The position numbers and the translations under genes are program-made. A model generated the notes under the pieces. It saw nothing but the letters and a program-made list of their open reading frames with translations. It was not told the origin of the DNA and did not search any database. Below, piece by piece: positions 1 through 22,300 of a DNA stretch of 64,000 nt. Each line of letters starts with the position of its first letter. Within the stretch, counting starts at the first letter, position 1. Where the stretch lies: assembly GCA_963924565.1 (NCBI GenBank), contig OZ004613.1, positions 20,956,001-21,020,000 of the forward strand. Direction: 5' to 3'. Source of the stretch: Ascidiella aspersa (lineage: Eukaryota).

Positions 1-1131
1 AGCCGATTTGAATGCGCCAGTAAGCAAACACACTCGATTTCGGCAGGCATGCAAAGTCGCGCCAAACAATAATCCCCTTAAATTTGTTCCGATGTGCGAT
101 CGTTATCGGATCAGGAATGCGCTGCTTTTTATGTAAGGGCAACTTGCATCCAAATGCCGAAGCGTCGTGCGTTAAACATTGATTTCACTCCTTTTGTGCC
201 ATTAGAGCATTTAAACGTATATATAGTCTTGCATTTTCTGTAAAAAGTCGGTGGATACCTTAATGAACAGTTGTAAAATATCTGACAACCTTGCCAACTT
301 ATTCGCAAGATAAACATGACCAAGGTAACATGTCTATTGAGGTTTTATTGCGAACTTCATATAAACAGCAATAATACACTTCTGTGTCGGGAATTCAGGT
401 AAAAAAACAAAATCAAATAAACATTGGCCTCAAAAGGAGCAAATAATGACGTTTAGTTGAAAGGCAAATATGTGATCAACTAGAACGTCTAGTTTAATTT
501 ACTAAACACTATTTTTGATTTATTTGTCCAAGCGTTTCGTTTAAATGCACACCCGCTATATTTGTAACAGTTGCCTAGTTCGTGATATTCTCTATTGCAC
601 CGTTTTGCAGAAAATATTCAAAACTAAAAATAGGGTCCCTTTTGTCGCGTGCACTTCAAAAACCGCAAAACGTCGAGTTAAAATTCCATGTTAAACGATT
701 AAACTTTCACGCCTAATGAGATCAACGATCAGTGGTGTTATTAGGTCACACATCGCTATTCTCCAGGGTCCCAGGCCTAATTCGGTGAAAACTACAGTTG
801 GGCCGCTTTCTCGAAGCAACAAGTTGGACGCGCGTCTGATTTAATCCAATTCCGGCTTGCAACGAGATGAGTTCTTCCGATTCCAAGAGGCGCTTGACCG
901 CTTCGAATCGCCATCGCCAACTGACTCGAGATTTAATATCACTGTGGGAACAGACAAGCGGTAAAGTTATTTCTGAATTCCAATATGAAATTCACACTAT
1001 TTCCGGGGATATCGCAAATTTTATAACAAAATCGCTTTAATAACACATTAGGCTTAATCATTTTAAACAAAGATTGAACTTAGTACAGAACTTAGTAAAC
1101 CAAAAATCGGTTTGTTTAGATGTTATAATAT

Positions 1132-1170
1132 GATAAATATATTTCGCTATTAAAAGCATCATCAGTATCT
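1132..1170 (-). ncRNA. Minimal type I hammerhead ribozyme motif with intact core
   Basis: Minus strand reads AGATA CTGATGA T GCT-tttaat-AGC GAAA TATA TT TATC. Stem I GAUA/UAUC, core CUGAUGA and GAAA, 3-bp stem II, palindromic AUAUAU stem III, AUU triplet. Confidence 0.6.
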
Positions 1171-2648
1171 AAAAACCGTTTGTTTTAGCCATTCGGGCAG
1201 ATTATGTTATTCGAAAAAAAATTCTGATCATTTTGAACAACTTAGACAAATTTAATGGCCTGTCCGTTGAACACAACACCGTTCTCGCGTATTTTTATAG
1301 CACAGCATTTGAGGTTTAAATCTGATCACGGCCAGCGACTCAACTTGGCCATAACAGCTTGTCAAGGGTGAAGATCGTGGCGGAACGTCACTGGCCTGTT
1401 GATGGGAACGGACGTTTTATGGCACTTCATTGCCCAATCACCGGTGCTCGATTTGTCGTTTGCGATTACGGCGCATCGCAACCGTGCACTTCGCTGCCGA
1501 GCAAAATCAAAATGACAGATGATTATCCGACAATCCGTCATAATGCCCGTATATGAATGGCGGTGTCGGCCCAATGTGCCGCATTATCAAATCAAGTGTT
1601 CCCTGTCGGATGACACGTTGGGCCTAATGCTCACATATTGGAAGAACGTCGCATAATCCCTCAGCTACGTTGGTCGTCCTGCAATAACCTCAACACTGGA
1701 GGGTAAGAAACTTTGTCAGTAGAAAAAAAAACAATTACTAACTGAAAGATTTAACTAAATAACTAAAAAAAAATATATCAAATAAACTCAACTTTGTCAA
1801 AACATTTCGTTGGCCGCTTAACTAATAAATTCGTTTGATTCTGACTTTATTCTTCTTTAATATTTTTTTAAATAGATTTGTTATTGTTTAAAACTTACTT
1901 ATAAGCTGGAAAATATAACTTTTTTTTTAATTTTTAACCTTAAAATATTATTTTTAGAATCCCCGTACCACATTTGGAAATTAAATTTCCTTATCTTCCG
2001 CATTTTTATTTTACAGGATAATCAAGTAGGACAAAGCACGATCGCCTTGGCTATGAGTGACCTTGGTGTATGCGGGCAAGGCCGTCGCATATGGCGACCA
2101 ATGTGGACCTGTTGGAATGGCCAATTTAACTAAGATTTAAGTACACCTACATCGATTTGCGCGGTGGCGGCGTTCAAAAATTGCCTCAGCTCGCTATAAT
2201 CACCCGTTGAGCGGCGTCGCGTTGTGCCGGCGAGAAGTTGCTACAGTGGAAATCAACTATACACGCCGCTGCGCCGAAGCGTCGCGAATAAGTGGCGGAT
2301 TAGGGAACGCGAAAAGCCGCTTTTCAAAAGGCGATTGGTCGATGCTAATTTTCCCTGATGCAGAGAATGGGTTGTGCCAAGTCCAAGCCAGAAAAAGGCC
2401 CTGCACGCGCCGAAACCCTTATTTATACCCGAAAGCAAGTATTTCGCGGTCACTTCTCCAAGATCAACCGCAGTGGTCCAGCATTTTGCAAACTGCATCC
2501 AGAGAGCCCAGATCAAAGCGAGGAGGAACCTGACAGTTTTACTTGAGCTTAAATACGCGTGTGAGAAAGTTTCAAAGCTAAAATAGGAGTTCACCTCAGA
2601 AGAAGAAATAAAATCAACAGATATAGGAGGAGTGAGAAAATTGCCGAA

Positions 2649-5600
2649 ATGGGAGATGCGATGATCAAATATGACGAGCGCTTCTGCAACAATAGTGATT
2701 GGAAGGACTTCGCAAGGGAAGATGTTAAAAAAATGCCTGTCAAAAGTGTTACAGGAAAAAAAAGTAAGCACGTTAAATGCGAAGTACACCAAACAAAATA
2801 TACTGGTCACAGTGATCTCAAAAAAACTTAATATTTAAAGGTTTTATCATGCCAAGTTACTTATATATTTTTTAAAACCGTTTTGTCAAATTTTAGATCG
2901 AATTCTCGACATCTTGTGTTGTGTGTGCGGAGACCGAAGTTCTGGAAAGCATTACGGGGTTTTTGCTTGCGACGGATGTAGCGGCTTCTTCAAACGGAGC
3001 ATTAGAAAAAGCCGAAAATACTTATGCAAGGTAAAAATCAGTTTGCTGGTTCCTTTTCGCATTAATATAAAATTTGTGAGACAAAGGTATTTTTGGAGTA
3101 AATGGTTGGAGGTTGTAGTACGACGTCATAATAATATCTAAGCCCATACAGAAGTAGGTATCATTTTGAACGTTTCGAATAACTCTTTATTCATTTTCAA
3201 CAAAGAGTTACTCGAAACTTTTAACAAGATACCTATACCTCTGTATGGGCTTTGAGATTCTTATGAAGGTATTTTGAATGTTTAAATAACGACAAAGGTA
3301 TTTTTAATGGTGGAACAATGACAAACACATTTTTAATGGTGGAATAACATGATTAAAAGGCAAAACCAAAAAACTAAAGAGGGCATGTTGCACTATTTTA
3401 TTAAACTCTTTTTTTATTTATTAAACAACGTTTATTACCAAGTCCACCAACAGTCTGAATATGTTTTCTCATTTCAATAAACAACTCGCTGTTTTCAGGG
3501 TAACGTTGATGGCCAGTGCAAGGTGGACAAAATACATCGAAACCAATGTCGAGCCTGTAGGCTGCAACGATGTCTAGCAGTTAATATGAATAAAGAAGCG
3601 GTTCAGGTAATTAAAAATAACAGCAATACAGTAATTCTTCCCACATATTTCAATAAACTATATTTTTTTAAATATTAGTCTTTTTAAAATCAGTTTACTC
3701 TTCACTAAACTACATATATGAAATTATGTTTATTATAAATAATTATAAAGGGCTGTTTCTTTATAAACCCGAAAGCTTTAGCAACAGAGCTTTGATTTTC
3801 GATCTTTTCTGCGACGTGTGTTTCAATGAACCAGGGACGCATTTTATTTTAACAGTAAAATACGTTCAGGGCTAATGTCTGAACCTCTATTTTAATCGGA
3901 TTTTCTAATATCAGTAAAACCAACGCCGTCCATAGTTCTACAAATATCCTTCATATTTAGTAAATGCAACAAAACATATTATAACATAGGTAAGTTTGGT
4001 TTACAAAAGTAACATTTTCGCCGCCATTTTATATACGTGCAGCATGAGCGCGGACCTCGAAACACCAGTGGCTTCCACGCCGACGTTAGCTCGCCCAATT
4101 TCGATCAACGGCGCCACTCTGCTGCAGATCGCAATACACGGTCCATGGAAACACTCGGCATGAATCTCAGCATTGGAGGTACGTTTTGGCTGAACGCAAT
4201 GCTCGTATTATCCTACAGTGTTCCGAAAATTTGGTTTGTAAAAAGAAACAAATTTTAAGCTAAATCAAAACTTCGGCAGTGTAGTGTCGAGTGGGTTGGT
4301 AGTATTATACGTTTTTTTAGGCATGTTTATGTTTAAAAGTGATACCTATTTCATTTTAATAATATAAATCACCTTGACCCTTGCAAGATAAATGTCGACC
4401 TTAATTCCTGATCAGTAACAGCAAAAAATACAGCAAAGCTAGCAATTCAGGTCAGACACAATAAACAGATCTTGAAAGATAAATATATATATTTTTTTTA
4501 GAATTTTATTTGAATAAGATATACTGACGGTGCCTTGATTGGAGAAATATATATATATATATATCTTTTAAGATCTGTTTATTGTGTCTGACCTGAATTA
4601 CTAGGTTTGCTAGAGTATTTTTCTGCTGTTACATTTTATTACTGAATAGGATTGTTGGGCAATTTACGAAGGTTTTATTAAAAGCAATAAGCAGTTCAAC
4701 ATTTATATGCAATATTTGCAGATTTATACATATCATTTTTCATGAATGGCAAAGAGCAGATTGACACAGCGCATCCTAATCTAATATTATACGATTAAAA
4801 ATTGTTCTTAATATTACGCTTAAATATTTTCAGTTTTCCATTATAGTGCTCTGTTTGCTAAGCTCGTGCAGAATTTCCAAATTAAATCAAGTTAAAATAC
4901 ATAGGGGTTATTTTCTATCACGTGATACATCATTGAAAAATACGCAAATAGCCGAAAAACTTACAAGATCAAATTACGCAGGAATAAACCATCGATCATC
5001 ACCACGATCCTCTGTAAGTGGAACACAATCTCCTGACACAACTACTCAACATAATTATCAAAACATCTCGCCATCCAAGCACAAGCATTTCTTTCAACCG
5101 CACAATGACGCTACAACGCCGCTTTTCGGTGGCTCTCCTCTTTCGGAATATATAAGATGCCTTGCTTCCTTCAACAATCTGGCAAACGGTAAAGTTTAAA
5201 CCCATATACTAAATTAGTGTAGTGGCGTACGAACGTAAAACCATTCACTATCAAATATAACAATTGCTAACAGTAATATAATGAGGATCAATATAATAGA
5301 ACAAGGTATAATCTGTACTACCAACTTGTAAAACTAGATTAAGGTAACACAAACAATGCTATAATTTTATTGGATTTTAACTGTTGTGCTTTTATTAGGA
5401 CAACAGCATCCAGTGGATCTATGTTTTGCCCAACAGCAGCTGTTGTCGTCTTTGGAAGGTTCTAATATAGCAAAGAGAACAAAACAAGACTTAGCGCCAA
5501 TCGTTTCGCCGTCAGCACACACTTTTGTTGACTTGTTTCAAAGGCATTTTGCTCATTTAGTTGCCCAACAACAGCAAACGCTTGCACCGGTTGGTGCTCC

Positions 5601-8600
5601 GTGGAGTGCAAATACCTCGGAAACCGCTAACATTCCAAGTTGGCCTATTCCAAGGTAATTTTAGCTCTTGTTGAATTTTCAATTTTAGTAATGATTATAA
5701 GGATACACTTGCCTCAACATATAAAAGGTTTGATAAACGTTCAAACTCAAATGTTTGATTGTTAGTTACTGCACCTAAACTACTTTGTTGATGAGAGTTT
5801 TTTTTTAGCTACATGAGCTATCAGAATAAAATACAAAATAGAAGACAAGAATATATTAAGCTACAATAATAAATATGAGCTGACACAATAATAATAAGAA
5901 CTGAAATAACATTAATTTCTATTACATCATATATAACTTATTCACTGAGTATATCGTTTTGAAATTTGATGTAACAAAATAGAAATTTTATCAAATCATT
6001 CCCTTTGCAGAACCGCAACAAGATTTCAAACCGAACATAAGGATTTCAGTCAATCGACAAACAATTGGTTTCAAAGTGCGAATAACAATCATATCCGTTC
6101 ACGGATAACTTCACCAGAAACAAATTCTAAACTTTTGACCAAATTAATTAACAGCAATAAGTTGAGCACGACCGCCTTGCGGGCCCTGTATAATGCTGTA
6201 AATTGGTGTTGTCAAACATTGCCTTTTGCAGCGATGCCCGCATCTGAACAGGTAAATGGTGCTTAGAAATGAAATAGCATATTGGTATCGAAATAAACTG
6301 TCAAGTATCGAACATCCCTAGCCAAAACCTTAGGTAGACTATAGTTTTATGGAGTATATTCAAACGGCACCCAACCTTTTACTAAAACAGTATTTTCAAA
6401 CACCGAAAATTCTCGCATTTCCCACTATTCCAGTCTTGCGATCAGCCGAACGAATTTGACTTTCAAAGTCTATATTGACCAAAAGCGTTCCTTTGAGATA
6501 AAAGTGCTTTCTGTCGGATTAGATCACTATATATATTTTGAACTGACAAAATTAGGAAGGCAAATTTAAAGTAAACTAGCTAACAATCAACCTAAAAACT
6601 GCTCCCCATTCAATGCGGTTTAGAAGCTTCTATTTTGTTTCAGCTTTCTCTTCTGCGCTCTAACTGGCCATCGCTAGTTGTTGTCGACATGGGTCATTCT
6701 GGAACTGCATCAGAATTTTTGAACTTACTACAGACCATTTCTTTTGCGGTTTGTCACCCAGGTAAGACACTTCTTTGTACATTTAATTTCGAAATCCTGG
6801 AGCCCAAAACAAATATAAGTTTACGCAAAGAGTCGATGACGCGTGAGATATACCAATATTATGAATTGGATTTATTCTGAAAGATCTCAAATCGATCATC
6901 CTTTGGGATTCAGACAGTTTCTAAGATTTTAATATGAGGAAACCTCCTGTTTTGGTAATTGAGTAATCTAGTCAAATACGTTTTGCCAACTTGGATGAAT
7001 AACACACCACAGACTTGTTTTTTGCACCCGAAAAAGAAAAGCATAGCCTAATGCATCCTGATCGTATAATGTCTTCCTAAACTCTCCCAGTATGCTATTA
7101 ATATAGTTGGCAGACTCCAGCAATAAAATGGAAATTATAACAATATTACAGTCGGAAAACAATACAGTTTGAAAAAAATAGAGCTAAAACCCAAAAGTCG
7201 GAATAACGTCTAAATCGGAAGTAGACATAAACCCATCGAAATTAGGCCTACTTGGCCAGAACAAAATCTAAACCCCAATCCCATCCCTAACTTTATCACT
7301 AACTCTCCTAATAATAGCCGTAAGTCAAATTCAAACCGCACCAATAACTTCAAGTAGGGGCAAGCATAACGGTGCTAAAACAGCGACACAACAAAGAAGT
7401 GTTCAAGTTCCGTTTTAATATAGGATGAATCTTGAACATGTTACAGGTACACTTTTAGTATAATATAATGTACTTACAGTTTGACTGAGATTTATTTAAA
7501 CGTCTTCTAAACCTTAATGCTGATAACATTTTAAAGCTGAAACGTTAAAAAATATTATCAATGTTTGCTATTGGACTTTTGACTATAATCTATACTGATC
7601 TGCAACAACTATATTAAAATCTAGAGGCGCCATCTCTTGAAAGGATAAACGTTCGACTCCACGGCGCCAATCAGCGACTACAAAAGTCACTAATTGCAGT
7701 GAGAAGTGTAGAGATGAAATTAACAGAACGTGACGTAGTCTTCGGTGTTTGCCTCCTGGGTAAGTCAACAATAGTATGTTACGCAAATTTATTGACAGTT
7801 CAGAGGCTATGTGCAGCATCCATAAATATGGGAGATCTCTATTTTATACCTTTTTTCTGCAGTTTTGTATTACATAAGATTTTGTGTTTGACGCCAGTTT
7901 TCTAACTGATTGCGAATTCCACGAGCCTAAGGTATTTTATTCTATAAGAGAATCTTAGGTACTTTTACAAAATAAATGTTGATAACAAGTCAAAACGTGA
8001 TATTTTTTGTTGGTTCTAATAAAATCATAGCATATTTCCCATAACGTTATACCAGGGGTCGGCAACCTTTTTCTATAGTCGCGGGCCAAAACCAAATTCA
8101 CAAAGGTCTCTGCGGGCCGCACAAAATGATCACTAAGAATTGTGTTATTAGCATTTTAGAACAACTGTGCATCAGGCGGGCCCCGGATCGTTTTTGCACT
8201 TAAAACGTGTTTATTTAAATTTGAGGAGACTGTAAAGTGTTGGCGCAAAGCGCGAAAAAAGGCGTTTGTTTGGTTCAAAATTCGAGTTCACACGTTGTCA
8301 TCCATACAACTAATGAAAAGTGTAATAACACTACTTTGGGGAACGCGATAACATTTAAGGTTAAGCTAGGTCAGCGTTTGTAAACGTTTGTAAGTGAAGG
8401 CAGAACTAGCGAGCGAAGCGAGCGCGATTTTTTTTGGTATACCGGTATTTCTTTTAATTTCTCGCAAGTTTTTATTACATTGCCGAAAATAAAAAATAAA
8501 AAAATTTAAAAAAAGATATGTCCAATATTGTGAAATACGTTTTCCGTTTTTCCGTGACGCACTTTGGCAGCTGTCCACCGCGCAACGGTAAAGAAGTGCT

Positions 8601-9587
8601 GATCTAGTAGAAACAAACAGCATCAAAACGTAAACAAACCGGACGTAGAAAGATCATTCGCGCGAAGTGCGAAAATTCTTCGCACTTATATAGTTAAAAT
8701 AGTCAAAAAGTAAGTGAAATAGGGTCTAATTTGTTAAAGAAGCGGCGGGCCGGATGAATTACATCGGCGGGCGGCCCGCGGACCTTAGGTTGCCGACCCC
8801 TGCGTCATACCATTGCCTTGTATGGTTTCACGCTTTTCATACTCTAAAGTCTAAATGTCTCAACATATTCAAATCCCATCCTGATATAAATTGTTTATTC
8901 TGTAGAATAACAACAAAAACGTGATTAAACTTTGCAACATGTGATGAGTAACAAAGCGTTTTTTAATAAGCATTTATGGCGGGAAATAAAACAGTTTGTA
9001 ATTCACTGTTCTAAATTTAAAATTCACTTACCAGGGCAATAAAGTGTAGGTCAAAAACCAAAAATACCTAAATTGACCCAAAATGATTTTTAGGACCGGG
9101 AACGAGCTACACCAAAGAAAGATCAAGTATTTGGAATAGGTTTCACTCCTCTCTAAAGGTTGCAGTCAGCGATCCGAGCGAGTTAATGGCAAGGTAGGAC
9201 GCTCGATTTTAATTTCAAACGAACATAAAACGAATAGAAAAGCATAAAATGTATTGTTCAAGTAACGAAAACCTGAAACTGGAAAGTTTCTTGAATAAAC
9301 CTTAAATATTTCAACCACTACTATACGAATATTTGAACTAAGCCAATAAAGTAATAATAAGTGGTAAAATGCATTGTCGCGTAATGTTAAAAGCGAAATG
9401 TATTCCAGTGTTTTAAGACCTTTGCTCGTTGCTTTGCAGGGAAACACAAATTAACTCGTTGATTGACAGCTTGCGACATTTGCGACAAGTAGATGTGGAG
9501 CAACTGTTCGGCGACCACTCAGCAAACCCGGGATTCGCCAAGAGTTTTGTGGAAAGCGTTCATTCGAATTTGCAACGCGATTTGTAA
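2649..9587 (+). CDS. NR2E1: Tailless/TLX-type orphan nuclear receptor (NR2E1-like), 11 coding exons, ~565 aa
   Basis: Exons 2649-2763, 2897-3030, 3499-3606, 4043-4178, 4982-5188, 5399-5654, 6011-6251, 6644-6761, 7625-7759, 9094-9193, 9440-9587. All introns are GT-AG, phases are consistent, total 1698 nt ending in TAA. The DBD reads [36 protein letters not shown]...[44 protein letters not shown], with the TLX-type P-box CDGCSG, 7-residue D-box and QHERGPR T-box. A diverged LBD is recognisable ([27 protein letters not shown]...[17 protein letters not shown]). AATAAA follows near 9677. Hinge and LBD exons are less certain than the DBD exons. Confidence 0.9.
3100..3265. repeat. Short interspersed palindromic repeat (MITE-like), 3 copies in the window
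   Basis: Internal inverted repeat aagcccatacagaagtaggtatc / gatacctatacctctgtatgggctt; homologous copies at ~26832-26970 (+) and ~53913-54004 (-). Confidence 0.7.
4389..4632. mobile_element. Fold-back element (probable non-autonomous Penelope-like remnant) with a degenerate hammerhead motif, in TLX intron 4
   Basis: Inverted arms ~4415-4491 and ~4556-4632, with an extra ~25-bp tail on the left arm. 4516-4567 reads AAGATATA CTGACGG T GCC-ttgatt-GGA GAAA (TA)n TATATCTT. A related copy lies at 34037-34212. Confidence 0.55.
8053..8802. mobile_element. hAT-type MITE (family A)
   Basis: TIRs caggggtcggcaacct / aggttgccgacccctg; 8-bp TSD cgttatac / cgtcatac; internal sequence homologous to 20890-21449 in the opposite orientation. 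Confidence 0.9.
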
Positions 9588-10316
9588 ATTGTTTCCGAAT
9601 GGCGCCTATAGGCTTTTCGGAATTCGCGTGTTAGAACGGCGCTGTGGTTGAGATAGCACCAGAGTTTTATTTTGCTAATAAAATGATGTTATACAATATG
9701 TCGATGGAAATTAGTCGTGCTGTACTTAAGCTATTATCATGTTATCTGAGAGTGAAAGTATAGTAGCTGAAATATTTCTACTCCGATTACTAAAATTGTT
9801 GCTAAAAACAAAATAAATACACCGTAAAATAGTTTCAAATTTTTTGAATGTTTTTATTTCAATGTTTATATTTGTAAGGGATATGTCTCAAATATAGCTC
9901 TTTTAACAAAGGGGTTATTACTAAACAAAAACCTTGTGGTCAGCCTGTGTATGCGACGATCTGTTCGTTTTAAGGCATTTCTAGTCAAGTCAACCTGCCC
10001 TTAAATCGTCCAGGAAGCAATATGTTTTACAATTGCAACGTTTTCTGTATTGCAATAACGTGGAAGGCTAGAAAGTCAAGAAAGAAAATGAATACATTTT
10101 CTAATAATACAGACGTGTTACTGAAAATTATGCTACTTCATTAGAGTGTAAACAGAAAAATAATGCTGCTATTTTGTATGTTTTCTGAAACAGCTCTGAG
10201 ATTTCAATATGGAATAACCGAGGATTTTGTTTTACAATTGAAATTTGTCAAATTAACAGAATTTAGGCAAAGGTATTTTTTTAAATAAAAAGGGAAACCA
10301 CTGTCGGAAATTTAAA

Positions 10317-13300
10317 ATGAATTGTTTTCGTGTTGTAGTTTTTGTTCTTGCTGTTGCAGTAGTACAGACACAAGGTACGTAATAGTGTAAAAACGAAAAA
10401 CGAAGTAATACCAGTCCAACGTGTGTTTGGTTTAGGAACATGATAACACAATACTTGTTACCTTTTCTTTTCTTTTTTTTATATTTTGTTATCATCCAAA
10501 AGTTCCCCAGGAACTGTGGTAAAATAAACATTATAGTTTCAGCCCTGGCAAGTTAGAAACTTATAATTAGGTTTTATAATTGTACTATACTCTTAGTGAA
10601 CAGCGTTGAAAATAATTGGATTTTTCCAAGTATGATGCATTCTTATGTAGAGCATAGACTTTCCTTCTCATTGAGTTGTATGTGTTCATCATGTGGTAAA
10701 TGTTTGCATCACCTAACAAGACAACCGTAGTATATAAAAACATATCGTTTTAGATAAATTCTACATTTTGGGTAACCTATAATCAAAATAGGATTATATA
10801 GAAAGAGATTCGAGACAAAACTTTCTATTTTCGGTAGGCCTATAAACGGAGAAATTTGTCAATGAAATCTATATGAGTATAGTTAAACAACGCTCGGTTA
10901 TTCATAGCTCTAAAATGTTGGAAATGTCAGTCGGCAAGTATCACGCAATGCAAGTCTGAAGGGTCGTGGGAGCTTTGTGCACGAAACGAGGTTTGTAATT
11001 TACATGTTGAAACAATTGATCGTTTGACAGTATGACTGGTAGCCTTTAATATAGGGTTACCAACTATTTTGGCTTAAAATCAGGACGTTTCCAATCAGTC
11101 ACCAAATCCATCATTTTTGTGGTTGTTTAAGTATGACGTTAGCAAATACGTCATAGCGTGTTTAGAGCAAACAATATCTGGACCAATTACTCGCTAAAGT
11201 GACGTTATACATACGTTCATGTTTAACGCAAGGAATAAAACGCAAATCAGGTATCGCTTTTCAACAAGTTAAGACAGACCAAATACAACAAACCTATATT
11301 GGTGTAACGTATTGAAAATGTTGTCTTACTAAAAACCCGACATTTTGGTTGAATATGGACGGAAAAAAGTCCTCAAAATCGGGACTGTAAAATCGAGACG
11401 TATATGGTAAGTCAACTGTAATATGAACATTTTTATTTGTGTGCAAACACGGAATATGGCAAGCCCGACGAACGATTTTTTTTTATATCTGTCAGGTTTA
11501 AACGATGAACAAAACTTCAAGTAACAATATAAAGTTGGATTGTAATTAGTAGTGAAAGTATTTTTGTGTGTTTTGTTATGTACGTGAGTTATCATATTGT
11601 GTAATTTGAGCATCTTAACATTGAACAATGAACTTACTTAATTAAATCGCGTGTATTTTAATTAATTATTTATCGAAATTTAACAAAACAAACTCGCATT
11701 ATTTACTCGAATACATACAATCATGTGCGTTAGTTGTTACCAAGGAAACGAATGTTGTATAAAGCTAATTTATTTAATGCGAGTGGAATGCCTGTGGCAT
11801 CAATCATTATGCTCTTAAATTAAGAAACTTTAAACTTAAAAGGTTTGCTATTTTGCAGCAAAGCTGTCATACTGAGGTGCGCACCCGACGGTCGAGATTG
11901 GAAAGTATTTCAACGGGATGTAAACAAACCCAAGCCTGTGTTAACGATGCATCACAGGTTCGTAGATTATAGTTAGGAAATACATCACTTTTCTGTCATA
12001 AAAAACATCAACGTGCTGCTGCGCAAGCGCACGTCAAACTCGGCACTTGATTAGACGAGTATTCTTACTAAAGCACATAATCTGACTCAAATAGAACAAA
12101 GTTGTCAGCAACATGAATTAACCAGTCTAAAAAGGTATATAGTTTGCATCACCGAAAGTTCGAATATTGTTTTATGTATGACCCGAAGTTCTTATTATTA
12201 CATTTGCAAACCGATTAAAATGCCCACGCTCACTCCCTATTGCTTTATATTACTTAGACAGGCATGTTTTTCATGAGACACAAAACAACAAAATCGCATT
12301 TTCGAGCGACATAAAAGTTTTGTGCAATTTTAGAAAACATTAAGGTAAAATAATAATAAACTTGTATCTCACAACCAAACGAAGTTTTAACTACAAAATA
12401 TAACTTTTGGATGATGTTCCTTGATATCATTATGCCTATTTCTTTCTCTTCGTTTTCAGCCTGGATGCATCCCTGGTGGGCAGACTTCAGTTTGCAGGTG
12501 TTGCTGTTCAAGAGACCGTTGTAACCAGCAGCTAAAACCAGTTTGCAAAGGAACGACGCCACGACATAATCCCATGCCAAGTATAATATAAATCCAGCCT
12601 CTGCATTTGATAGTTACGGCTAACGTACCATTATAGTCTAAATGCATAAAAGTGCCTGGTTCGTTAAACCGGCTTTCTTTTGATATAGCGTATTATAAAA
12701 ATGTAATGTTTGTATTTAAGTACATTTTATTTCCAGCGCGGAGGCTGTGTCATCGTCACAGCCCAAGGTGCTGGAATTATGTTCATCTTATACGAAGGCC
12801 GCTCATTTTTGAATGTTTTAGCAACGGCCAGCCTGTGTCGAATCGTGAAATGAACAGATGTGACACTTCGTGCCATTTTAGCTGTGATGAAGGTATGCTA
12901 ATACGGTTTTTAACTTCAGTTATGACATTTTACATTTTCTAACAACGTTTTAAGTTTTTACATTTTGTACTTTTAAAACTTTCTACGAATGGTGTGACGC
13001 AAATAGGCATTGCTATTTTATTATCATGAAATACAAATTTTTCGTTATTTTTAAACGTAAGACTAAAAAGTACTTGCTAGAATAAAAAGTAAACTTTATT
13101 CAGGTCACTTTTCCTGTTTATAGACCCATTTTTAATTGTTTAATTTACATTTTATTATAAAAATATATAGGTTACAAACTTGTTGGGTATGACGAACTCA
13201 GATGTCGATTTAGCGAACGATCAAACAAGTTCAGATGGTCTCACAGCATTCCAAGATGTGAACGTGAGTATAGTGTACCACTGTGCGCATTATCCGTTAT

Positions 13301-16300
13301 TTAATAAAACAATGACGGTTTCAGTAAACGCTTGATGTTTTCATTTACAAAGCTTTTGGGATAATTTTTATCATCCATTACAATGTGAAATATGGTCCTG
13401 CCAGTATGGTTCTCAACCGCGGCTCTGAGAGTGGCTTTTAATGATCTTTATGGCGGCTTAAAGTTAAATTCGACATATCAACCATTACCTTTGGTAAAAT
13501 ACTTGATTATCTGCTATGCTTAAATCAATAATCTATTTCCCTTAAAAATTAACTTAAAAGCTTGTTGGTAAAAAGTCAACAATTCTGTTACACATTTTGA
13601 GTTCGCATGACGTAGTTAATAAAACGCTCCAATAAATATAACATAAAACCATGACATCACAACACATCTATAAACGGCAATGCTTTCGTGTTTGATCGAA
13701 ATGAACTAAGGAGCACATACCAAGGGGCTGATCCAGGGGGACACCAGGCCAAGCCCGCTAAACTATATATATTTTTTAATTTCGTAGCGCTTTGCGCCAA
13801 TTGTTTTCTGTCGTTAATGTTTTTGTCGGTTTTAGGGACTTCTATTTAATTCAGCCCAAACCGCCATGCAAGGTAAACATGTCCTGCAGGGCGCAGGCTG
13901 CAGTAATAATTCACAAACTCTACTAAGTGCAGTTTTTGTTTAACTATATTACTCAATAAATGCCATTATATCCCTCAAAATGCGAGTCTCTTTTATGTGG
14001 CTCATGCATCACGTATCCTTTATATTGAAAGTTTTGCTAATGTTTTGCGCACGAGTTTATTTGAGAATAGCAAGTGTTTTTAGGACTAATTGTTTAATAA
14101 TGTTATTATGTAACTGACGTCGTCCCTTAAAAGTTGCATGACCATCTCCAAACGAAATCCTTGTTCCAACCCTGCATATAACACATGTCACGATGTCAAA
14201 ATACCTTTTGAAGAATGGTCGCCTACTTCAGGAAGAAAATAGTACGTTTCAGAGTAAATGGCAAGGGAAAGTTTTTAAAATTGAAAAGAACAAATAACCC
14301 ATCGCCTTATTTGTGTTAAATTTCGATCACGATATTTCTCTGCACTCTTTTAAAAAAGGTCTGCTTAAATTTTTTGCTCGGAACGCTGACAAAGGTTGAG
14401 AACCACTGGCCCGACCAGGAGCGGCCTCCACCCACTTCAAACGCCCCCCCCCCCAAACCAGTAAAGCGTTTTTTTGTGACGTCATTTATGAAAAAAAACA
14501 TATGTCCCATAACAAAAATCTTAGGTTCGCGCCTGGTCCTGACTGACATGCTTTACATTCATTGTTCTTACTGTTGAACTTGTGGATAATAGATGATCTT
14601 TTTGTCAATAGATGACCTTTTTTACGTTTTGCGTATTTCATGTCCTTCTTCGGTATGCAACACCGCTTCAAAAGGCATAATGTTTATGATAAATCACATA
14701 CCTTGAAAAAAAGAGTAAAATAGTTCGATCCCCAATATGTCTATCTTTACAGCGAACACTTGCGACCCGTCGATGATACATGTTCATCCACCACTTGAAT
14801 GCACAGATTCCAATCTTGTTGGCAGCGAATGTCTAAAATTGTGTCCTAGCGGATATCATCCTAATCACGGCAATCCAATTCGATGTGGTAAGGGTAAACT
14901 GGTTTTGATATGAGAAAGATGTTCACAAGACAAATGTATTTAAATCACAAAACAACAAAAATATTTTAACGGTTTGTTTTTATATTCGGTATAGAATTAC
15001 GATGCGTTGATATGGATTAGATTCTAATATTCTAATCATTGGAAGATCTTATACCGTTTGCGAGAAGCTGTATTTTTCTTTAGAATTGTCAGTTTAGTTT
15101 AGTAGTCAAGCCTATTCTTATTTTGGTATCACCACACTGCCTTTAACTGTACGATTTTAATTTCTCATAATTTGTGCTTTAACACAAAATATATTTAGAA
15201 TAATGGCATACAAACGTACACCCAACAACATAAATACTATTCTAACATAAATTTACATAAACTCTCACCTGAACATGTCAATAGAATACCTAAGAACAAA
15301 GGAAAGTAGGGGGGGGCGCAAAACTTTCAAAATGTGCTTTATAGGCGCTGGAGGGCATTGGATTGGTGAGGTTCCACAATGTGTTGCGAATGATTGTCCG
15401 CCTCAAACTCAACCGGAACACGGTGATGTTTCTTGCAGCGACGCCAACAACGAACACAGCAACTGCACGTAAGTCGAAATTCAACTGTATAGTGCAATGC
15501 CAAAATAATTTACAGAACTTTTCAGTCTATTCTAGTTTACTAAATATTATCACCAAAATATATTGGTTTTAAAGCAGATCAGGTCATCTATAATTACGTC
15601 AGTTGTGAAGGTAAGCCAAAACGGTCTGTCTATAATTGCCATGGGTTCCAGTAAAAACATTTTTCGTCGTTCCTGTAAGAAAATTATTCTACTTTCAACC
15701 CTGAATTTCGCTTTAGGTTTTCTTGCGATCACGGGTACCAATTGGTTGGTTCCAAATATCTGCGATGCTTACGACAACAAGGCCAAGGACCCGAAGCTTT
15801 TCCGCGAAACGACAAGATAACCATCGTTGAACCCCGTGTCACAACTCCAAGATGGATTCCATCTACTCCACCAGTGTGCAAAAGTATTACCTTCATGCAA
15901 TTAAAATAACACAGTACCTGTGGTTGAGACAATGCGAAAAAATACATGTTTTTTAAAGCTATTTAAATCTCAAGCACACAAATGAGCACAAAATTCAGGA
16001 TTATAATGCTACAATGCAGTTACAAACAAGTAGGGCTGCGTAGTCGGTTAAAATAAACCGAGTTCAAATCCGCCATAAAAAGTAAAGTCGAGTCCGACTC
16101 CCGAGTCCCGGGTCCGATTCCGGCCAAATGTGCGATCTTGTCGAGTCCGACTCTACATCCTGTATTGTACCCATTAACGTAACGTAGTTAAGGTACAGCC
16201 ATTTACTTATAGGGGTGTCATATAATTTATCCACCCACAATACAGGGTTAAAAAATATTCTATTCCACCTTTACAATTTATATGTTGCGGCAATATCAGT

Positions 16301-19300
16301 TTCAAAAATGCGTACTGCGCTTGCGCACGTCGCGTAGTTATACTCGAGTCCCGAGTCCGACTCCAGCAAAACAAACCGACTCCGTAGAAGCCCAAATGCG
16401 ACTTCGGCTCCGCAGCCCTGGTTAGAAGTGCTGACCGCGATAAGCTTATATAGGTATCGTAAGAAATATGGTATATAAGCTCTTGCAAAATTTTAAAGAT
16501 TCCCATATGTATTGACAAACAATATAAAACAAATTAACGTTTCGTTTTTCTTTATGTTTCCAAAGGCGATTGTTGTTCATAACCAGCTTAAAATTGATTC
16601 TTGTTTCTTAATAGAAATATATTTGGCCAAGGCGGGAGATGGCTTTACCAGTACTTTGATCTTAAACAATTGTGTTGCTCATATAGTTATCGAATGGGCC
16701 TCATGGGGTCCATGGTCTCCCGGATGCTCTGTGACGTGCGGTAAAGGCGAAAGTACAAGAAAGAGATTGTGCGTCGTGGGTCAGAAAGGCGCTAGTGGTT
16801 GCAAAGGATCCGATACAGAGAGGAGAGCGTGCGATCGTGGACTTTGCATAGGTAAGTTGAATTTTTGGCTTGGCTTGGCCAAATTTCGGCTTACTCTGCG
16901 ATATCTTAGATTCCCATGGAAAACCTTTTATGTTAATCAAATGCACCGCAAACTCTGTCTATCTCTTGGGTTTGAGCAAAAACTTTACCTATTGATATAA
17001 CTAGTGAATTTTTTTATTTTATTTTCATTTAGTCGTGTTTATATAAACTGTTCCTATACCTGATTTCAGGCGGGACAGTCCCGTTTAAAATAGGTCTTTG
17101 TCCCGTCGTCCCGATTATAGTAACTAAAATGTCCCGCGTTTTGAACAGCCAACATTTTACGGATATAAGTTTATTGTGATAGGTCCGTTTTGCCAACAAT
17201 ATAAATATAATTGTTACGTCACTATAGCGTGCAATTGGTCCAGTGCCTGGGTTGATTGCTTGTGCATTAAGTATAGTACAGTATTAATATGCTAGTATAG
17301 GAGGTGTTGTGTCCCGACCATAAGAATCCCACATAATATTATACTACCTGTGAAATAATAGATAATTGTACTGTACATATTGTTTCTTTATACATCTTAT
17401 TTTGTGTTTTCAAAGTAGTTTAATACTAGGAGTGTAAATTGTACGACAAATTAAGAAGTCAAAACAAAATAGCGAGAAAATTTAGCCCTATTTATTTTAT
17501 TTTTTCAGTGTAAATTTACCAAGATAATCGAGACACAGGTTGTCTGTATGAACAACGTGCCGAAACAATATAATAATGAATGCAAAATTTCACGCGCGAA
17601 TTGTTTGACTTCTCAATTCGCCGTAATCAATCGATGTAGGCCTACTTTTAATCTTGTTTTTAATTGCACATTCGCACTGAATTTGACAGGCAACAAAATG
17701 CCCTCTTTAAGTTGCATTGTGACGTCACGCTAGACGTATTTCCGTTACGTAAAACTTACAAGACCATAAAAAATTCTATATCTAGTGACTGTTTGGAAGC
17801 CCATTTTAAGGCCAAAAATTTAGTATCCCTTCCCACTTCTCGTACAATATGCACTACAAAGATGTGTTTGATTCAGCCATGCATATCAAAATAATCGGTG
17901 ATTGGAATAAAACAATGCCACAAAAACTGCTAATCGTTTACTTTAAGTATTTGATATTTTTACGCTTTATAAACGGGGTCGCAGTGATACATTCAGCACA
18001 GTACCAGACCTACAGTATAGTGTACAAAGAAATCAGATCATACTTCTCTTAACTTAAAAATCTACATAGTATTTCTAACATATATTACAAGTAGATAAAT
18101 AAGGTATACTATGTGACGCATAAATTTAGAATGGACGCCTTGGAGTAAGTGGAGCTCTTGCTCAGCGTCATGTGCTGGGGGAACCCAATTCAGAAATAGA
18201 GAGTGTTTAAATGGCAATCCTGGTGACAGCGGATGCCCATTACCCGATGAAGAAAATGAAAGATGCAATTCGGACGTTTGTCCAGGTAAACTAGTCATGC
18301 TGTAGGTGAGATATTACCAGTGCTGTAGTCACTGAAATTAGTAGTATCGATAAACTTAAGGATAAGTCTTGTGCACAAATGACTGATTTAAGATGATTGA
18401 TTACCAGTGCTGTAGTGCTGTAAATGACTTGACCTAATTTATAGTAAATATCCTCATCTTTTTGTTGAATTATGATAATATAATCTCCAATTTCTGTACA
18501 ATACATGTTAAATAAAAAGCCTATAACCCATATTTAATGAAGTTTTGTGTGGTGACTTACAAATCAATTGGATCTATGTCTGTTAAAAAGATTTGTTAAT
18601 AACACTGTTATTAATTCATGCTTTTTTGCCAAGATGCCATGCTAGAATATACTAATTTAAAAAATTAAAACGATTAGTTTACTTCTGATTAAATACCTCC
18701 TGTTAAACCCGTATAGTGTGCAAGGAACTTCCACCAATAGCAAACGGTCGATACGCGTGCACCGACGGTCAACACGTTGGAAGCGAATGCTCTTTCGGTT
18801 GCAATTTGGGCTACTCTCTGAACCGGGGTCAGCCAAACAGCACAGTTTGCGAAGTACGCGATGGGATGGCGAATTGGAACAACAAACTCCCGACATGCGT
18901 CGCTGGTATGAGATATAGGCTACACATAAGGTTTACTCGTTTTTTCAGTACTCCTATATACATGTTGGAGAAACCACGTTTTAAACAACGAATGGAGATG
19001 AGTTTTAAGGGCAAATTTATAACAATTTTATAATTGGCTTATGTCGCAAGATTCTGTAATTGGTATGATGTTTTTGTCTCTTTATTCAGGTAATACCACA
19101 CTTACATTTTGTGCTTATATTAGCTCTTGAATATATTAAAATTTTTAATTGGTACTATAGATTTTGAAACACATTGTAGCGTATTATAATTATGCTTTCT
19201 CATAGCATAACAAAAGGCGTCTTATACAAACTTTTTAAACGTACTAAATTTTATCCAATTAAATCCAACAGAGATTGCGCCATGCAAGCCGGAAGTATTG

Positions 19301-22300
19301 TCGGACGTTGTTTTCGTTCTGGACTCATCGGCATCAGTCAACCTCGAAAGTCAGTTCAAAGCAGTTTCAAATTGGGAGAGGATTCTTGACTTTGTCAACA
19401 ACGTTATCGGGTTTCTATGAAAAGCTTATACTAGCGCTTTCCCATCCCCAACTTAATTAGTTATACGGACAAATCAACATAATTGTCGCTGCCATTGCTC
19501 GAATAAGCCAAAAATAAAACTATTTTGTCTTTTTTTGCTTCTTTTTTTATTCTTTTGCTTTAAAGTGTTTATGACAAAAGCCTAAATAGTTGCTTATTAT
19601 TATACGTTTAAGAAAATATGTAAACTTTTTCCCAGTTTTTTAATAAAATTATTGGTCTAATAAATTTCCTAAATCGGTCCCTTGAAGTTTAACTGCATTT
19701 GAAATTAAAAAGCAGCAAAAAAATACTAAAAAAAATGGTATCGTAATATGTCATAAAATCGCAGCGCATTTAAAATGCGAAACGACGCTACTCGAATAGC
19801 GGTGATCACATTTGGCGACAGCAACCCGGCATTGAGCGGACAACACATTTTCTTCACTCAATACGCCAACGACAAGTCGGCATTACAGGCGGCAGTTCTT
19901 CGACTTCGATACCTCGACACAGACTGTAAGATATTCCACGATAACTACATGGCAGCTATCAGTGCATTTATAGCAGATATACTAAAACTTTCAGGCTTAG
20001 CGGTCTGTGATAGTAGGGGAGTATTATTAAAGTGTATGTTCCTGTGATGACAAGATATATTTTTATCTTACAGAGAAGAATTTAGAGTCGTGTTGTCAAT
20101 TAACTAGCGAGAATTGTTTTTGACGTATATAATTTTATTCGTTAGAAGATTCGAAGATCTTCTGTAAATATGCAAATAAACATACCCTGATCAAAGTATG
20201 TGTTTAAGTTTAGGTCATGTAGTTTACGAACTATAAAAAATTTTTAAAAATGTGTAACAGAATCATTTTTCATATGACTATTATACGGACACCGACAGTG
20301 CGCATGTGATTCACTTAGCAAAGAGAAATAGTAGTAATGAATTTTGCATTTTTAAAACGTAGGCCTATTAGCTTTTACCAATCTAGTTTAAAGTCTCCTC
20401 CGTGAATAGTTAATTTGAAACATATAGGAATAACATAGCCATTCTTCAAGGGCTTCAAGACTGATTACCGCGTTTGCGTACAATGTGGAAATCGACGGCA
20501 AAACATACAATATAATAAAAGTTTATTTTAGCTACAAATACAGGAGCAGCATTGCAATATGCCGATAATGTACTATTATCTGCTGCTAATGGAGACAGGC
20601 CTGACGTGCCCAACAGTTTGGTTGTGATTACGGACGGTAATTCGACGGACGATGTACTTCAACCTAGCAATGCTTTGAGGAGCAGAGGTGTAAAGGTATG
20701 TGTCGAAATTTGTTACTTTTATCATTTTTATTCCTTTCGTCCGGCCCGCGATGGGATTTTGAGTGGCCCTTTGTAAAATATCAAGCATAGAACGAGACTC
20801 CCAAATGCTAAACTTTGTAAGCGTTTGAGGATATCAGTAAGCGACAGAAAGCCCCAATTCGATGCTATTGTAAGACCTGAAGTCTAAAACAGAGGTCGGC
20901 AACCCACGGCCCGCGGGCCGGATGCGCCCCGCTTCGCGCGAATGATCTTACTGCGTCCAAATTGTTCACGTTTTGATTTTGCTGGAAGAGCAACTCTCCG
21001 TTATATATATATTTTTTAATTTTTTATTTTCGGTAATGTAATAAAACTTGCAACAAATTTAAAAGAAATGCCGGTATACGTAAAAATCGCGTTCGCTTCG
21101 CTCGCCACGTGCGCACTGACTTAAAAAGGTTAACAAACACTAAACAAGGTTAACTATTAAAGTTATCGCGTTTCTTTAAAGTAGTTTTATTACACTTTTA
21201 ATTGGGAGTATGAATGACGACGTTTGTGCTCGAATTTTAAACCAAACAAACGCCCTTTTTCGCGCTTTACGCCAACGCTTTACTGCCTCCTTAAATGTAA
21301 TTAAACACGCTTTACGTGAAAAAAAAAAGATCCGAGGTCCGCCTGATTAAAAGTTGTTCTAACATTTTAATAACACAATTCTCAGTTAAATTTTTGTGCT
21401 TTCTGAGTTTGGTGTTGGCCCACGACTAGAAAAAGGTTGCCGACCCCTGGTCTAAACCAACTCATCCTTTTTCTCACTGAAATCTTGGTGCTGTAGCACA
21501 CTTCACTTTTGACTCTTCCAAAGTTATCAATATGTAGTAGGGTACATTTACATAAATAAAGCACCATAAAATTAAAGCGTGTCTAATATGTTTACTATTC
21601 GCATTTGGTGGATCATCATGTTGTTAGGTATGACTGTGGTGGATCATGGCAGAAATCATTTGAACACCCCTGATATAGACTATGGCAGTCCAATTAATAT
21701 ATCGATCAGGAATCCGGCCCGCCTAGTACTTCATTTCCCATATCAGGCCCGCCGACTGGAGAAGTTGCCCGCCCCTGGATGCAACCATACCACAGTAATG
21801 CGCTATTTGCCATTTGTTTTTGAATTTGCCGGTTTATTTCTGCGTTGCATATAGCTTATAATATTTTCACACATAGAAAATATTGTTTGACATGAACCTG
21901 GCTTGTTGTTACAGATTCTAGGTGTTGGCGTTGGGGCAAATGTTGTCAAACAGCAAATGATCGACATTGCTCGGCCAACTGAACCGGTTTTACTTTCGGA
22001 CGGATTTGCGGCGCTCGACCGTCTACTTGCGGCCGAAGTTGTGCGAGACTTATGTTCAACAAGTAAGGTTTATCTTCCATTTCAGGTATTTCTAGTTTGG
22101 AAATAGCTAAAATGTATTTTGGGGTAGGTATACAATTTCGAAATCTTTCAAACTATAGTATATCAGGGGTTCTTAACCTTTTTTGTATGTTTTACCCTTT
22201 TAACAAAAATGAATGTCAGATTTACCCTCAACATATCATATTTAAATAGTGCTCATTTATTAAAAATTTCATCAGTTATATTTAATGCGGCGGCTTTCCT

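What the first reader, a model, noticed from the sequence alone, without database searches (positions are those of the whole stretch)
2649..9587. An intact Tailless/TLX (NR2E1) gene in what appears to be a tunicate genome
Seen: a complete 11-exon ORF whose DBD has the TLX diagnostics (RILDI lead-in after a phase-1 intron, P-box CDGCSG rather than the CNGCSG of PNR, 7-aa D-box, QHERGPR). Inferred: the host is a tunicate. From recollection, to be verified: nuclear-receptor surveys of Ciona reported no NR2E member, and the group has been treated as lost in urochordates. A retained TLX would make that loss lineage-restricted and supply a candidate regulator of anterior brain, photoreceptor or neural-progenitor development in this lineage.
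Basis: partly seen in the sequence, partly recalled or inferred. Interest (0 to 1): 0.85.

Follow-up and report, generated by a model that had tools for sequence, protein, structure and literature searches.

The report
Sea-squirt tailless/TLX-like nuclear receptor gene
This is a real, intact sea-squirt gene for a tailless/TLX-type DNA-binding receptor; reviews say tunicates lost this gene, but matching genes already sit in the public protein sets of Ciona, Styela and Clavelina, so the published loss looks like an oversight, not something special to this species.

Summary
An 11-exon, all GT-AG, 575-codon open reading frame lies at 2649-9587 (+). Its DNA-binding domain has the CDGCSG P-box, a 7-residue D-box and QHERGPR.

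The host is an ascidian. An intronless HSP70 from the same genome is closest to Phallusia (84%) and Ciona (81%), against 72-75% for other animals.

Reviews do state that tailless/TLX was lost in Ciona and in tunicates (PMC4122922, PMC7827873). But the closest relatives of this gene are existing database proteins:
- Ciona intestinalis XP_078485933.1, named 'NR2E1-like'
- Styela clava XP_039269258, named 'NR2E1-like'
- Clavelina lepadiformis CAK8682698.1

So the gene is kept across ascidians including Ciona.

Orthology to TLX rather than to its sister dissatisfaction (dsf) is favoured but not proven. The DBD profile scores 9-16 bits higher for TLX, dsf-specific states are absent, and the ML tree gives 86/72 support. 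AU tests do not reject dsf.

The ligand-binding domain is very divergent but colinear with TLX. No RNA reads covered the exons.

The assembly holds a second intact copy 166 kb upstream at 98.7% identity. It is either a young duplicate or an uncollapsed haplotype.

Another first-stage note in this scan (s1-791368) covers this same stretch.

The parts
2649..2763 (+). Exon 1: start codon and N-terminal 38 codons plus 1 base (phase 1)
   Evidence: First ATG after an in-frame stop. Its S-x-W and KK-N/S motifs align with the N-termini of the Clavelina and Ciona proteins.
2897..3030 (+). Exon 2: first zinc finger, P-box CDGCSG, start of the D-box
   Evidence: Pfam zf-C4, E 4.1e-16. 91% identical to Clavelina P0007, 86% to Ciona P0016 and Styela P0030.
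3499..3606 (+). Exon 3: rest of the 7-residue D-box and the second zinc finger, ending ...EAVQ
   Evidence: Pfam zf-C4, E 4.1e-9. tblastn hits from the tunicate orthologues.
4043..4178 (+). Exon 4: HERGPR (T/A-box) and the start of the hinge
   Evidence: Direct reading; alignment.
4952..5188 (+). Exon 5: hinge, carrying the tunicate-shared SPDTTT motif
   Evidence: tblastn and alignment to Ciona and Clavelina. The acceptor has a weak pyrimidine tract, so this is the least certain boundary.
5399..5654 (+). Exon 6: Q-rich, low-complexity hinge
   Evidence: Open frame with consistent phases. No homology support beyond colinearity.
6011..6251 (+). Exon 7: end of the hinge and the LBD helix 3-4 region ([18 protein letters not shown]...)
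   Evidence: hhalign against the family alignment A2, profile columns 203-235, E 1.1e-4. tblastn from Clavelina, E 7.6e-6.
6644..6761 (+). Exon 8: LBD helix 5 region ([17 protein letters not shown]...)
   Evidence: hhalign columns 236-269, E 1.3e-4, abutting exon 7's match exactly.
7625..7759 (+). Exon 9: middle helices of the LBD
   Evidence: Weak hhalign match, columns 284-314, E 0.028, in the right order. Colinear in the alignment.
9094..9193 (+). Exon 10: LBD helix 9-10 region
   Evidence: Supported only by splice sites, phase and colinearity.
9440..9587 (+). Exon 11: LBD C-terminus and stop codon
   Evidence: hhalign columns 360-379, E 0.0049. AATAAA at 9677-9682.
8047..8803 (.). High-copy repeat, about 755 bp, inside intron 9; not part of the gene's function
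   Evidence: More than 40 genomic copies at 80-92% identity. Very high depth in the DNA runs, and RNA reads on both strands.
1..18403 (+). Block that occurs a second time in the assembly at C7:20789552-20807945 (98.7% identical), carrying a second intact copy of the gene
   Evidence: blastn. Copy 2's ORF is intact with 16 aa differences, none in the DBD.

Best explanation
This is the ascidian orthologue of tailless/TLX (NR2E1).

Anatomy:
- an N-terminal TLX-type DNA-binding domain
- a long, disordered, fast-evolving hinge
- a very divergent but colinear nuclear-receptor ligand-binding domain

Inferred mechanism, taken from what is known of Drosophila Tailless and vertebrate TLX:
- It binds extended AAGTCA-type half-sites as a monomer, through the CDGCSG P-box and the HERGPR T/A-box.
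- It acts as a ligand-independent transcriptional repressor through its LBD, most likely in neural tissue.

The gene is not peculiar to this species. Orthologues exist in Ciona, Clavelina and Styela, so the published 'loss of tailless/TLX in tunicates' is most likely an artefact of early gene surveys that missed a fast-evolving gene.

Shown here: the gene structure, the DBD family, the tunicate orthologues, the ascidian host and the colinearity of the LBD.

Inferred only: DNA target, repression, site of expression, and TLX rather than dsf orthology.
For: - Pfam zf-C4 on two exons.
- The 11-exon ORF is intact.
- The best single-DBD hits among 1.84 billion protein representatives are Clavelina, Ciona and Styela proteins. 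Two of these RefSeq names 'NR2E1-like'.
- A profile of those tunicate proteins next finds tailless/NR2E1 proteins.
- All five tunicate DBDs score 9-16 bits higher on a TLX profile than on a dsf profile.
- They share RIL, SIR(R/K), a non-T residue in Y-x-CK, a 7-residue D-box (5 in Clavelina) and C-L after the second finger with TLX. They lack the dsf states RLL, SIH, 9-residue D-box, C-F and GPRK.
- The careful ML tree places a tunicate clade (91/96) with the TLX clade (86/72), outside a dsf clade supported at 100/99. The DBD-only tree agrees.
- LBD exons 7, 8, 9 and 11 match successive parts of the family LBD profile in order.
- An AlphaFold model of the Ciona orthologue has a confident LBD (pLDDT 80-93). 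The first LBD-only PDB match listed is human TLX, 4xaj.
- The host is an ascidian by its HSP70.
- No PNR-type DBD and no other CDGCSG locus turned up in this genome.
Against: - AU tests do not reject tunicates + dsf (p 0.34, 0.25 and 0.22).
- The tunicate branches are very long: 2.3 changes per site for the window gene and 4 for Styela.
- LBD profile scores do not discriminate: 30.0 bits for TLX against 27.0 for dsf on the window gene, and the order is reversed for Ciona.
- Intron positions in the DBD differ from those inferred for vertebrate TLX and protostome tll/dsf (inference from read-through gene models).
- No RNA read covers any exon in the one RNA run tried, of which about 6% was read.
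- Differences between the two assembly copies show relaxed constraint outside the DBD: 16 aa changes from 28 nt changes.
- That Ciona KY.Chr6.665 is the same gene as XP_018671289.1 is assumed, not shown.
Confidence: 0.75

Rival explanations
1. The tunicate gene is the orthologue of dissatisfaction (dsf, NR2E4) and not of TLX. Ambulacrarians keep both genes. On this reading tunicates lost TLX, as the literature says, and kept a fast-evolving dsf, which vertebrates lost.
For: - AU tests do not reject tunicates + dsf.
- dsf shares the CDGCSG P-box and HERGPR.
- The LBDs of Ciona A, Ciona B and Clavelina score 1.4-5.9 bits higher on the dsf profile.
- Deuterostome dsf-type genes exist in Saccoglossus, Glandiceps and Lytechinus.
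Against: - None of the dsf-specific DBD states is present: 9-residue D-box, SIH, RLL, C-F, GPRK.
- The DBD profile favours TLX by 9-16 bits in all five tunicates.
- The dsf clade excludes them at 100/99 in both careful trees.
Confidence: 0.15
2. The locus is a decaying or non-functional copy. The DBD is still intact, but the hinge and LBD are drifting, so the '11-exon ORF' partly reflects chance open frames.
For: - No RNA reads on the exons.
- The exon p-distance between the two copies (1.6%) is not lower than the intron p-distance (1.05%), and 16 of the changes alter residues.
- Pfam does not recognise the LBD exon by exon.
- Exons 6 and 10 have no homology support of their own.
Against: - Both copies keep a 575-codon frame across 11 exons, with every splice site intact and no change in the DBD.
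- The LBD exons match the family LBD in colinear order.
- Orthologues with the same architecture persist in three other ascidian lineages, and Pfam PF00104 is recognised in Ciona and Clavelina.
- The post-DBD part scores 30 bits, E 8e-11, on a TLX LBD profile.
Confidence: 0.07
3. It belongs to a tunicate-specific NR2E lineage that cannot be assigned to any bilaterian subgroup, either because it split off before TLX and dsf diverged or because it is too diverged to place.
For: In the 45-row quick tree rooted on PNR, the tunicates sit in an unresolved basal polytomy with TLX, dsf and cnidarian NR2E1.
Against: - That placement is what long-branch attraction to the 6.5-change PNR outgroup would give.
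- With the outgroup and other long rows removed, the tunicates join TLX.
- Chordates descend from an ancestor that had both TLX and dsf, so a pre-split lineage is unparsimonious.
Confidence: 0.03

Closest known systems
Vertebrate TLX (NR2E1) and Drosophila Tailless (NR2E2)
   Same: - zf-C4 DBD with the D-G-x-S/A-G P-box.
- 7-residue D-box.
- RILDI lead-in and QHERGPR T/A-box.
- DBD-hinge-LBD order; about 80% identity in the DBD.
- The LBD is colinear, and its helix 3-5 motifs can be aligned.
   Different: - The hinge is about 170-200 residues longer and low in complexity.
- LBD identity is only about 20-30%, and the C-terminal AF2-like helix is poorly conserved.
- The residue before the first Cys is L, not P (ILDILC), a state shared by all tunicate sequences.
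- Intron positions in the DBD differ from those inferred for vertebrates.
- DNA binding and repression were not tested.
Ciona intestinalis XP_078485933.1 / XP_018671289.1, Clavelina lepadiformis CAK8682698.1, Styela clava XP_039269258
   Same: - Same architecture.
- Same tunicate-specific DBD states.
- Shared hinge motif SPDTTT (Ciona and Clavelina).
- Same divergent LBD motifs.
- One clade with the window gene, 91/96.
   Different: - Only 36% identity overall to the nearest of them.
- The window protein is longer: 575 aa against 405-516.
- Clavelina has a 5-residue D-box.
- The host's own protein is not in the protein collections searched.
Dissatisfaction (dsf, NR2E4)
   Same: CDGCSG P-box, HERGPR, and membership of the TLX/dsf supergroup.
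   Different: dsf has a 9-residue D-box, SIH in place of SIR, RLL in place of RIL, C-F after the second finger, and GPRK. The window gene has none of these.
PNR (NR2E3) / FAX-1
   Same: NR2E group, with a similar DBD length.
   Different: Their P-box is CNGCSG and their T/A-box is NERQPR. No such DBD was found in this genome.

Membership tests
Nuclear receptor superfamily | C4-type double zinc-finger DBD (Pfam PF00105) | tested here: met
   E2 at E 4.1e-16 and E3 at E 4.1e-9, together covering profile positions 2-70.
Nuclear receptor superfamily | C-terminal helical LBD (Pfam PF00104 fold) | tested here: inconclusive
   - No Pfam hit exon by exon.
- Exons 7, 8, 9 and 11 match the family LBD profile in order (E 1e-4, 1e-4, 0.03, 0.005).
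- The in-script TLX LBD profile gives 30 bits.
- PF00104 is on record for the Ciona and Clavelina orthologues.
- The AF2 model of the Ciona LBD has pLDDT 80-93.
- The window's own joined LBD was not folded.
NR2E1/2 (TLX/Tailless) | P-box C-D-G-C-S/A-G | tested here: met
   CDGCSG in E2. This state is shared with dsf.
NR2E1/2 (TLX/Tailless) | 7-residue D-box | tested here: met
   C-KGNVDGQ-C. TLX and tll have 7 residues (8 in Strongylocentrotus), dsf 9, cnidarian NR2E1 8, and PNR 6.
NR2E1/2 (TLX/Tailless) | Groups inside the TLX/Tll clade in a phylogeny | tested here: inconclusive
   The careful ML tree supports tunicates+TLX at 86/72. AU tests reject neither TLX (p 0.42) nor dsf (p 0.22-0.34). 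The DBD profile favours TLX by 14.4 bits.
NR2E1/2 (TLX/Tailless) | Monomeric binding to AAGTCA half-sites; transcriptional repression through Atrophin-type corepressors | not testable with these tools
   Inferred from DBD conservation only.
NR2E1/2 (TLX/Tailless) | Expression in anterior neural tissue or eye | tested here: inconclusive
   No reads on the exons in RNA run X6, of which about 6% was read. Ciona KY.Chr6.665, whose best mouse hit is Nr2e1, is neural-complex-specific (PMC8462739); its identity with the orthologue is assumed.
NR2E4 (dissatisfaction) | 9-residue D-box, SIH motif, and C-F after the second finger | tested here: not met
   The window gene has a 7-residue D-box, SIRK and C-L. 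The dsf clade, supported at 100/99, excludes it.
NR2E3 (PNR) | P-box CNGCSG and NERQPR | tested here: not met
   The window gene has CDGCSG and HERGPR.

The most novel reading that the evidence does not exclude
Tailless/TLX was never lost in tunicates. A fast-evolving orthologue with an extremely diverged ligand-binding domain persists in ascidians of all three traditional orders (Ciona and this host, Clavelina, Styela). That overturns a loss claim repeated since the 2002 Ciona genome paper. In this species the gene may also have been duplicated very recently, giving two intact copies.
Probability: 0.7. Interest if true: 0.45.

Novelty: new member of a known kind. Interest (0 to 1): 0.35.

Why it matters
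Reviews of nuclear-receptor and tunicate genome evolution list tailless/TLX among the genes lost in Ciona or in tunicates (PMC4122922, PMC7827873). They use that loss in reconstructions of chordate gene content.

This window, together with existing but unremarked database entries from three other ascidians, shows the gene is present, though it has diverged a great deal outside the DBD. That corrects the presence/absence tables. It also gives ascidian developmental biologists a candidate regulator of anterior neural or photoreceptor development.

The correction is modest. RefSeq already names the Ciona and Styela genes 'NR2E1-like', so the main value is in joining the database record to the literature. 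A second point of value is the warning that P-box and T/A-box 'diagnostics' do not separate TLX from dsf.

Tried and rejected
- **RNA support for the splice model.** Only about 6% of the run was read, and only intronic repeats were covered. This is no evidence either way.
- **More tunicate orthologues through the LBD.** Searching with the Clavelina LBD found only itself. The profile of four tunicate proteins found no tunicate cluster beyond Ciona, Clavelina and Styela in the length range 255-810 aa. Phallusia, Halocynthia, Botryllus, Molgula and Oikopleura remain untested.
- **PDB sequence search with the tunicate profile.** DBD entries dominated the result, and it said nothing about the LBD.
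- **TLX versus dsf by AU tests.** Three data sets were tried; neither hypothesis was rejected.
- **Real duplication or haplotig.** Logan contigs cannot decide. The differences between the two copies reappear as variants in individuals X1 and X2, which fits alleles but does not exclude a young duplicate.
- **Rfam scan of 1-12000.** Nothing reached gathering score.
- **Joined spliced protein.** It was never sent to any search or folding tool; searches were made exon by exon, by reference. The joined model was assembled only inside sandbox scripts from window.fa, for alignment, profile scoring and trees.
- **Species name.** Organism names were coded, so the species could not be named.
Full report
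**What is in the sequence**

Direct reading and a script check confirm an 11-exon gene on the + strand from the ATG at 2649 to the stop at 9585-9587.

| Exon | Coordinates | Exon | Coordinates |
|---|---|---|---|
| E1 | 2649-2763 | E7 | 6011-6251 |
| E2 | 2897-3030 | E8 | 6644-6761 |
| E3 | 3499-3606 | E9 | 7625-7759 |
| E4 | 4043-4178 | E10 | 9094-9193 |
| E5 | 4952-5188 | E11 | 9440-9587 |
| E6 | 5399-5654 | | |

- All ten introns are GT-AG and the phases are consistent.
- The CDS is 1728 nt, giving 575 aa with a single terminal stop.
- An in-frame stop precedes the ATG, and an AATAAA lies at 9677-9682.
- E2 and E3 hit Pfam zf-C4 at E 4.1e-16 and 4.1e-9 and together cover the whole domain.

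**The host**

- The window is C7:20956001-21020000 of a 308.6-Mb, 75-contig assembly.
- An intronless HSP70 from the same genome (L034:1492-3384) is closest to Phallusia mammillata Hsp70 (84%), Ciona intestinalis (81%) and Ciona savignyi (79%).
- Among single-length Hsp70 hits, amphioxus, molluscs and arthropods come next at 70-75%.
- The nearest relatives of the receptor gene are also ascidian proteins.
- Earlier follow-ups on other pieces of this genome likewise called it a sea squirt.
- The host is therefore an ascidian. It is not Ciona, Clavelina or Styela clava. Organism names were coded, so I cannot name the species.

**Relatives**

- A phmmer search with exon 2 against 1.84 billion protein representatives gave these as its best single-DBD full-length hits:
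  - P0007, 91% identity
  - P0016, 86%
  - P0030, 86%
- The cluster look-up identifies them:
  - P0007 is Clavelina lepadiformis CAK8682698.1, uncharacterised.
  - P0016 is Ciona intestinalis XP_018671289.1, named 'NR5A2-like'. The newer XP_078485933.1 in the same cluster is named 'NR2E1-like'.
  - P0030 is Styela clava XP_039269258, named 'NR2E1-like'.
- These proteins share tunicate-specific states with the window gene:
  - ILDILC, where other animals have ILDIPC
  - the hinge motif SPDTTT
  - LBD motifs such as W-x(5)-LPF and NWP-x-L
- A profile of the four tunicate proteins found no further tunicate cluster. It then hit tailless and NR2E1 proteins from across animals.
- No protein identical to the window's product is in those collections.

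**What the literature says**

- Berná and Alvarez-Valin 2014 (PMC4122922) list 'the nuclear receptor tailless' among genes absent from Ciona, citing the 2002 genome paper.
But the loss is contradicted by Ciona's own RefSeq entries.
- It is also contradicted by a 2021 transcriptome study. Its supplement lists Ciona KY.Chr6.665 as a neural-complex-specific gene whose best mouse and zebrafish hit is Nr2e1 (PMC8462739).
- I did not find a paper that states the correction explicitly.
- That KY.Chr6.665 equals XP_018671289.1 is my assumption.

**TLX or dsf?**

Ambulacrarians carry both a TLX and a dsf-type gene, and RefSeq often names both 'NR2E1-like'. So dsf is a real rival.

Evidence for TLX:
- The tunicate DBDs share RIL, SIR(R/K), a non-T residue in Y-x-CK, a 7-residue D-box (5 in Clavelina) and C-L after the second finger with TLX.
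- They lack every dsf state: RLL, SIH, 9-residue D-box, C-F, GPRK.
- All five tunicate DBDs score 9-16 bits higher on a TLX profile than on a dsf profile. For the window gene the scores are 166.4 against 152.0.
- A careful IQ-TREE run (LG+C20+F+G4, 35 rows x 375 columns, cnidarian outgroup) gives three results:
  - a tunicate clade at 91/96
  - that clade joined to TLX at 86/72
  - a dsf clade at 100/99 that excludes the tunicates
- A DBD-only tree agrees.

Evidence that leaves it open:
- AU tests reject neither tunicates+TLX (p 0.42) nor tunicates+dsf (p 0.34, 0.25 and 0.22).
- LBD profile scores do not discriminate.
- The tunicate branches are very long.

I put TLX orthology at about 0.75-0.8 and dsf at about 0.15.

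The genome scan for zf-C4 found about 20 receptor loci. It found no PNR-type (CNGCSG) DBD and no other CDGCSG locus apart from the second copy described below.

**The ligand-binding domain**

- Pfam does not recognise it exon by exon.
- hhalign of single exons against a 45-sequence family alignment places them on successive profile columns:

| Exon | Profile columns | E-value |
|---|---|---|
| E7 | 203-235 | 1.1e-4 |
| E8 | 236-269 | 1.3e-4 |
| E9 | 284-314 | 0.028 |
| E11 | 360-379 | 0.0049 |

- The matches are in the right order, and E7 and E8 abut exactly.
- In a script, the post-DBD part scores 30 bits on a TLX LBD profile.
- An AlphaFold2 model of the Ciona orthologue has a confident DBD and LBD (pLDDT about 80-93) and a disordered hinge.
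- Foldseek matches that model to full-length receptor structures. The first LBD-only match in the listed hits is human TLX, 4xaj. This is partly circular, because TLX sequences were in the alignment used for the model.
- Overall the LBD is strongly diverged but is probably still a receptor LBD.
- The joined window protein was not sent to any search or folding tool. Searches were made exon by exon, by reference, and the joined model existed only inside scripts.

**Expression**

About 6% of the run was read, and only intronic repeats were covered. This neither supports nor refutes the splice model.

**Two copies**

- Window 1-18403 recurs at C7:20789552-20807945, 166 kb upstream on the same strand, at 98.7% identity including introns.
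- Copy 2 keeps all splice sites and the full frame.
- It differs at 28 exon positions, giving 16 residue changes. None is in the DBD; all are in the hinge or LBD.
- The exon p-distance is 1.6% and the intron p-distance 1.05%.
- The same differences appear as variants in DNA runs of two other individuals. X1 carries the copy-2 state at the listed sites, mostly on a single contig, and X2 carries a mosaic.
- This fits uncollapsed haplotypes, but a young duplicate with gene conversion is not excluded.
- A third, older partial copy of window 9832-23768 (86-98% identical), without the receptor gene, lies at C7:20902555-20923803. That shows real segmental duplication in the neighbourhood.

**Verdict**

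The gene does contradict the published loss, but it is not a lineage-restricted survivor. It is present in Ciona itself and in two other ascidian lineages, and it is already labelled NR2E1-like in RefSeq.

The result is therefore a new member of a known, already annotated gene family, with modest value as a correction to the literature.

Noticed in passing
window 8047-8803: Element of about 755 bp in intron 9 with short terminal inverted repeats. It has more than 40 copies at 80-92% identity on all large contigs. Its depth in the DNA runs is roughly a thousand times that of the flanks, and RNA reads lie on both strands.
   Followed up: partly
window 4195-4640: A second high-copy repeat, in intron 4, with a 76-nt hairpin (arms 4423-4498 and 4545-4620, 87% complementary). 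Its depth in the DNA runs is also very high.
   Followed up: partly
window 1066-1176: Element of about 108 bp with more than 50 genomic copies at 88-94%, often as close inverted pairs. No Rfam family reaches gathering score in window 1-12000.
   Followed up: partly
window 1-23768; G000:C7:20789552-20813228 and C7:20902555-20923803: Nested segmental duplications. One copy, near-identical over window 1-18403 (98.7%) and 94-97% identical beyond that to about 23.8 kb, carries the receptor gene. An older partial copy (86-98%) covers only the downstream part. Whether the near-identical copy is a haplotig is unresolved.
   Followed up: partly
proteins P0263, P0235, P0250 versus P0234, P0238, P0222: Hemichordates and echinoderms carry both a TLX gene and a dsf-type gene (9-residue D-box). 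RefSeq names both 'NR2E1-like', so dsf is not protostome-only and the automatic names hide it.
   Followed up: partly
whole genome G000: The zf-C4 scan finds about 20 receptor loci, among them DBDs that read like COUP-TF, GCNF, TR2/4, HNF4, RXR and NR4A (named from the sequence by eye). No PNR-type (CNGCSG) DBD was found.
   Followed up: partly
window 50918-51553: A 211-aa ORF that, by eye only, looks like part of a hAT/ZBED-type transposase, in the same window.
   Followed up: no
window 16512-17000: An ORF holding what reads, by eye only, as a thrombospondin type-1 repeat (WSPWS-like motif followed by CSVTCG). It probably belongs to a neighbouring multi-exon gene.
   Followed up: no
run X3 (organism B) on window 3869-9167: A run labelled as a different organism holds short pieces of this locus at 91-100% identity (most 96% or more) and 2-11x depth. 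That sample contains DNA of the same or a very close species.
   Followed up: no
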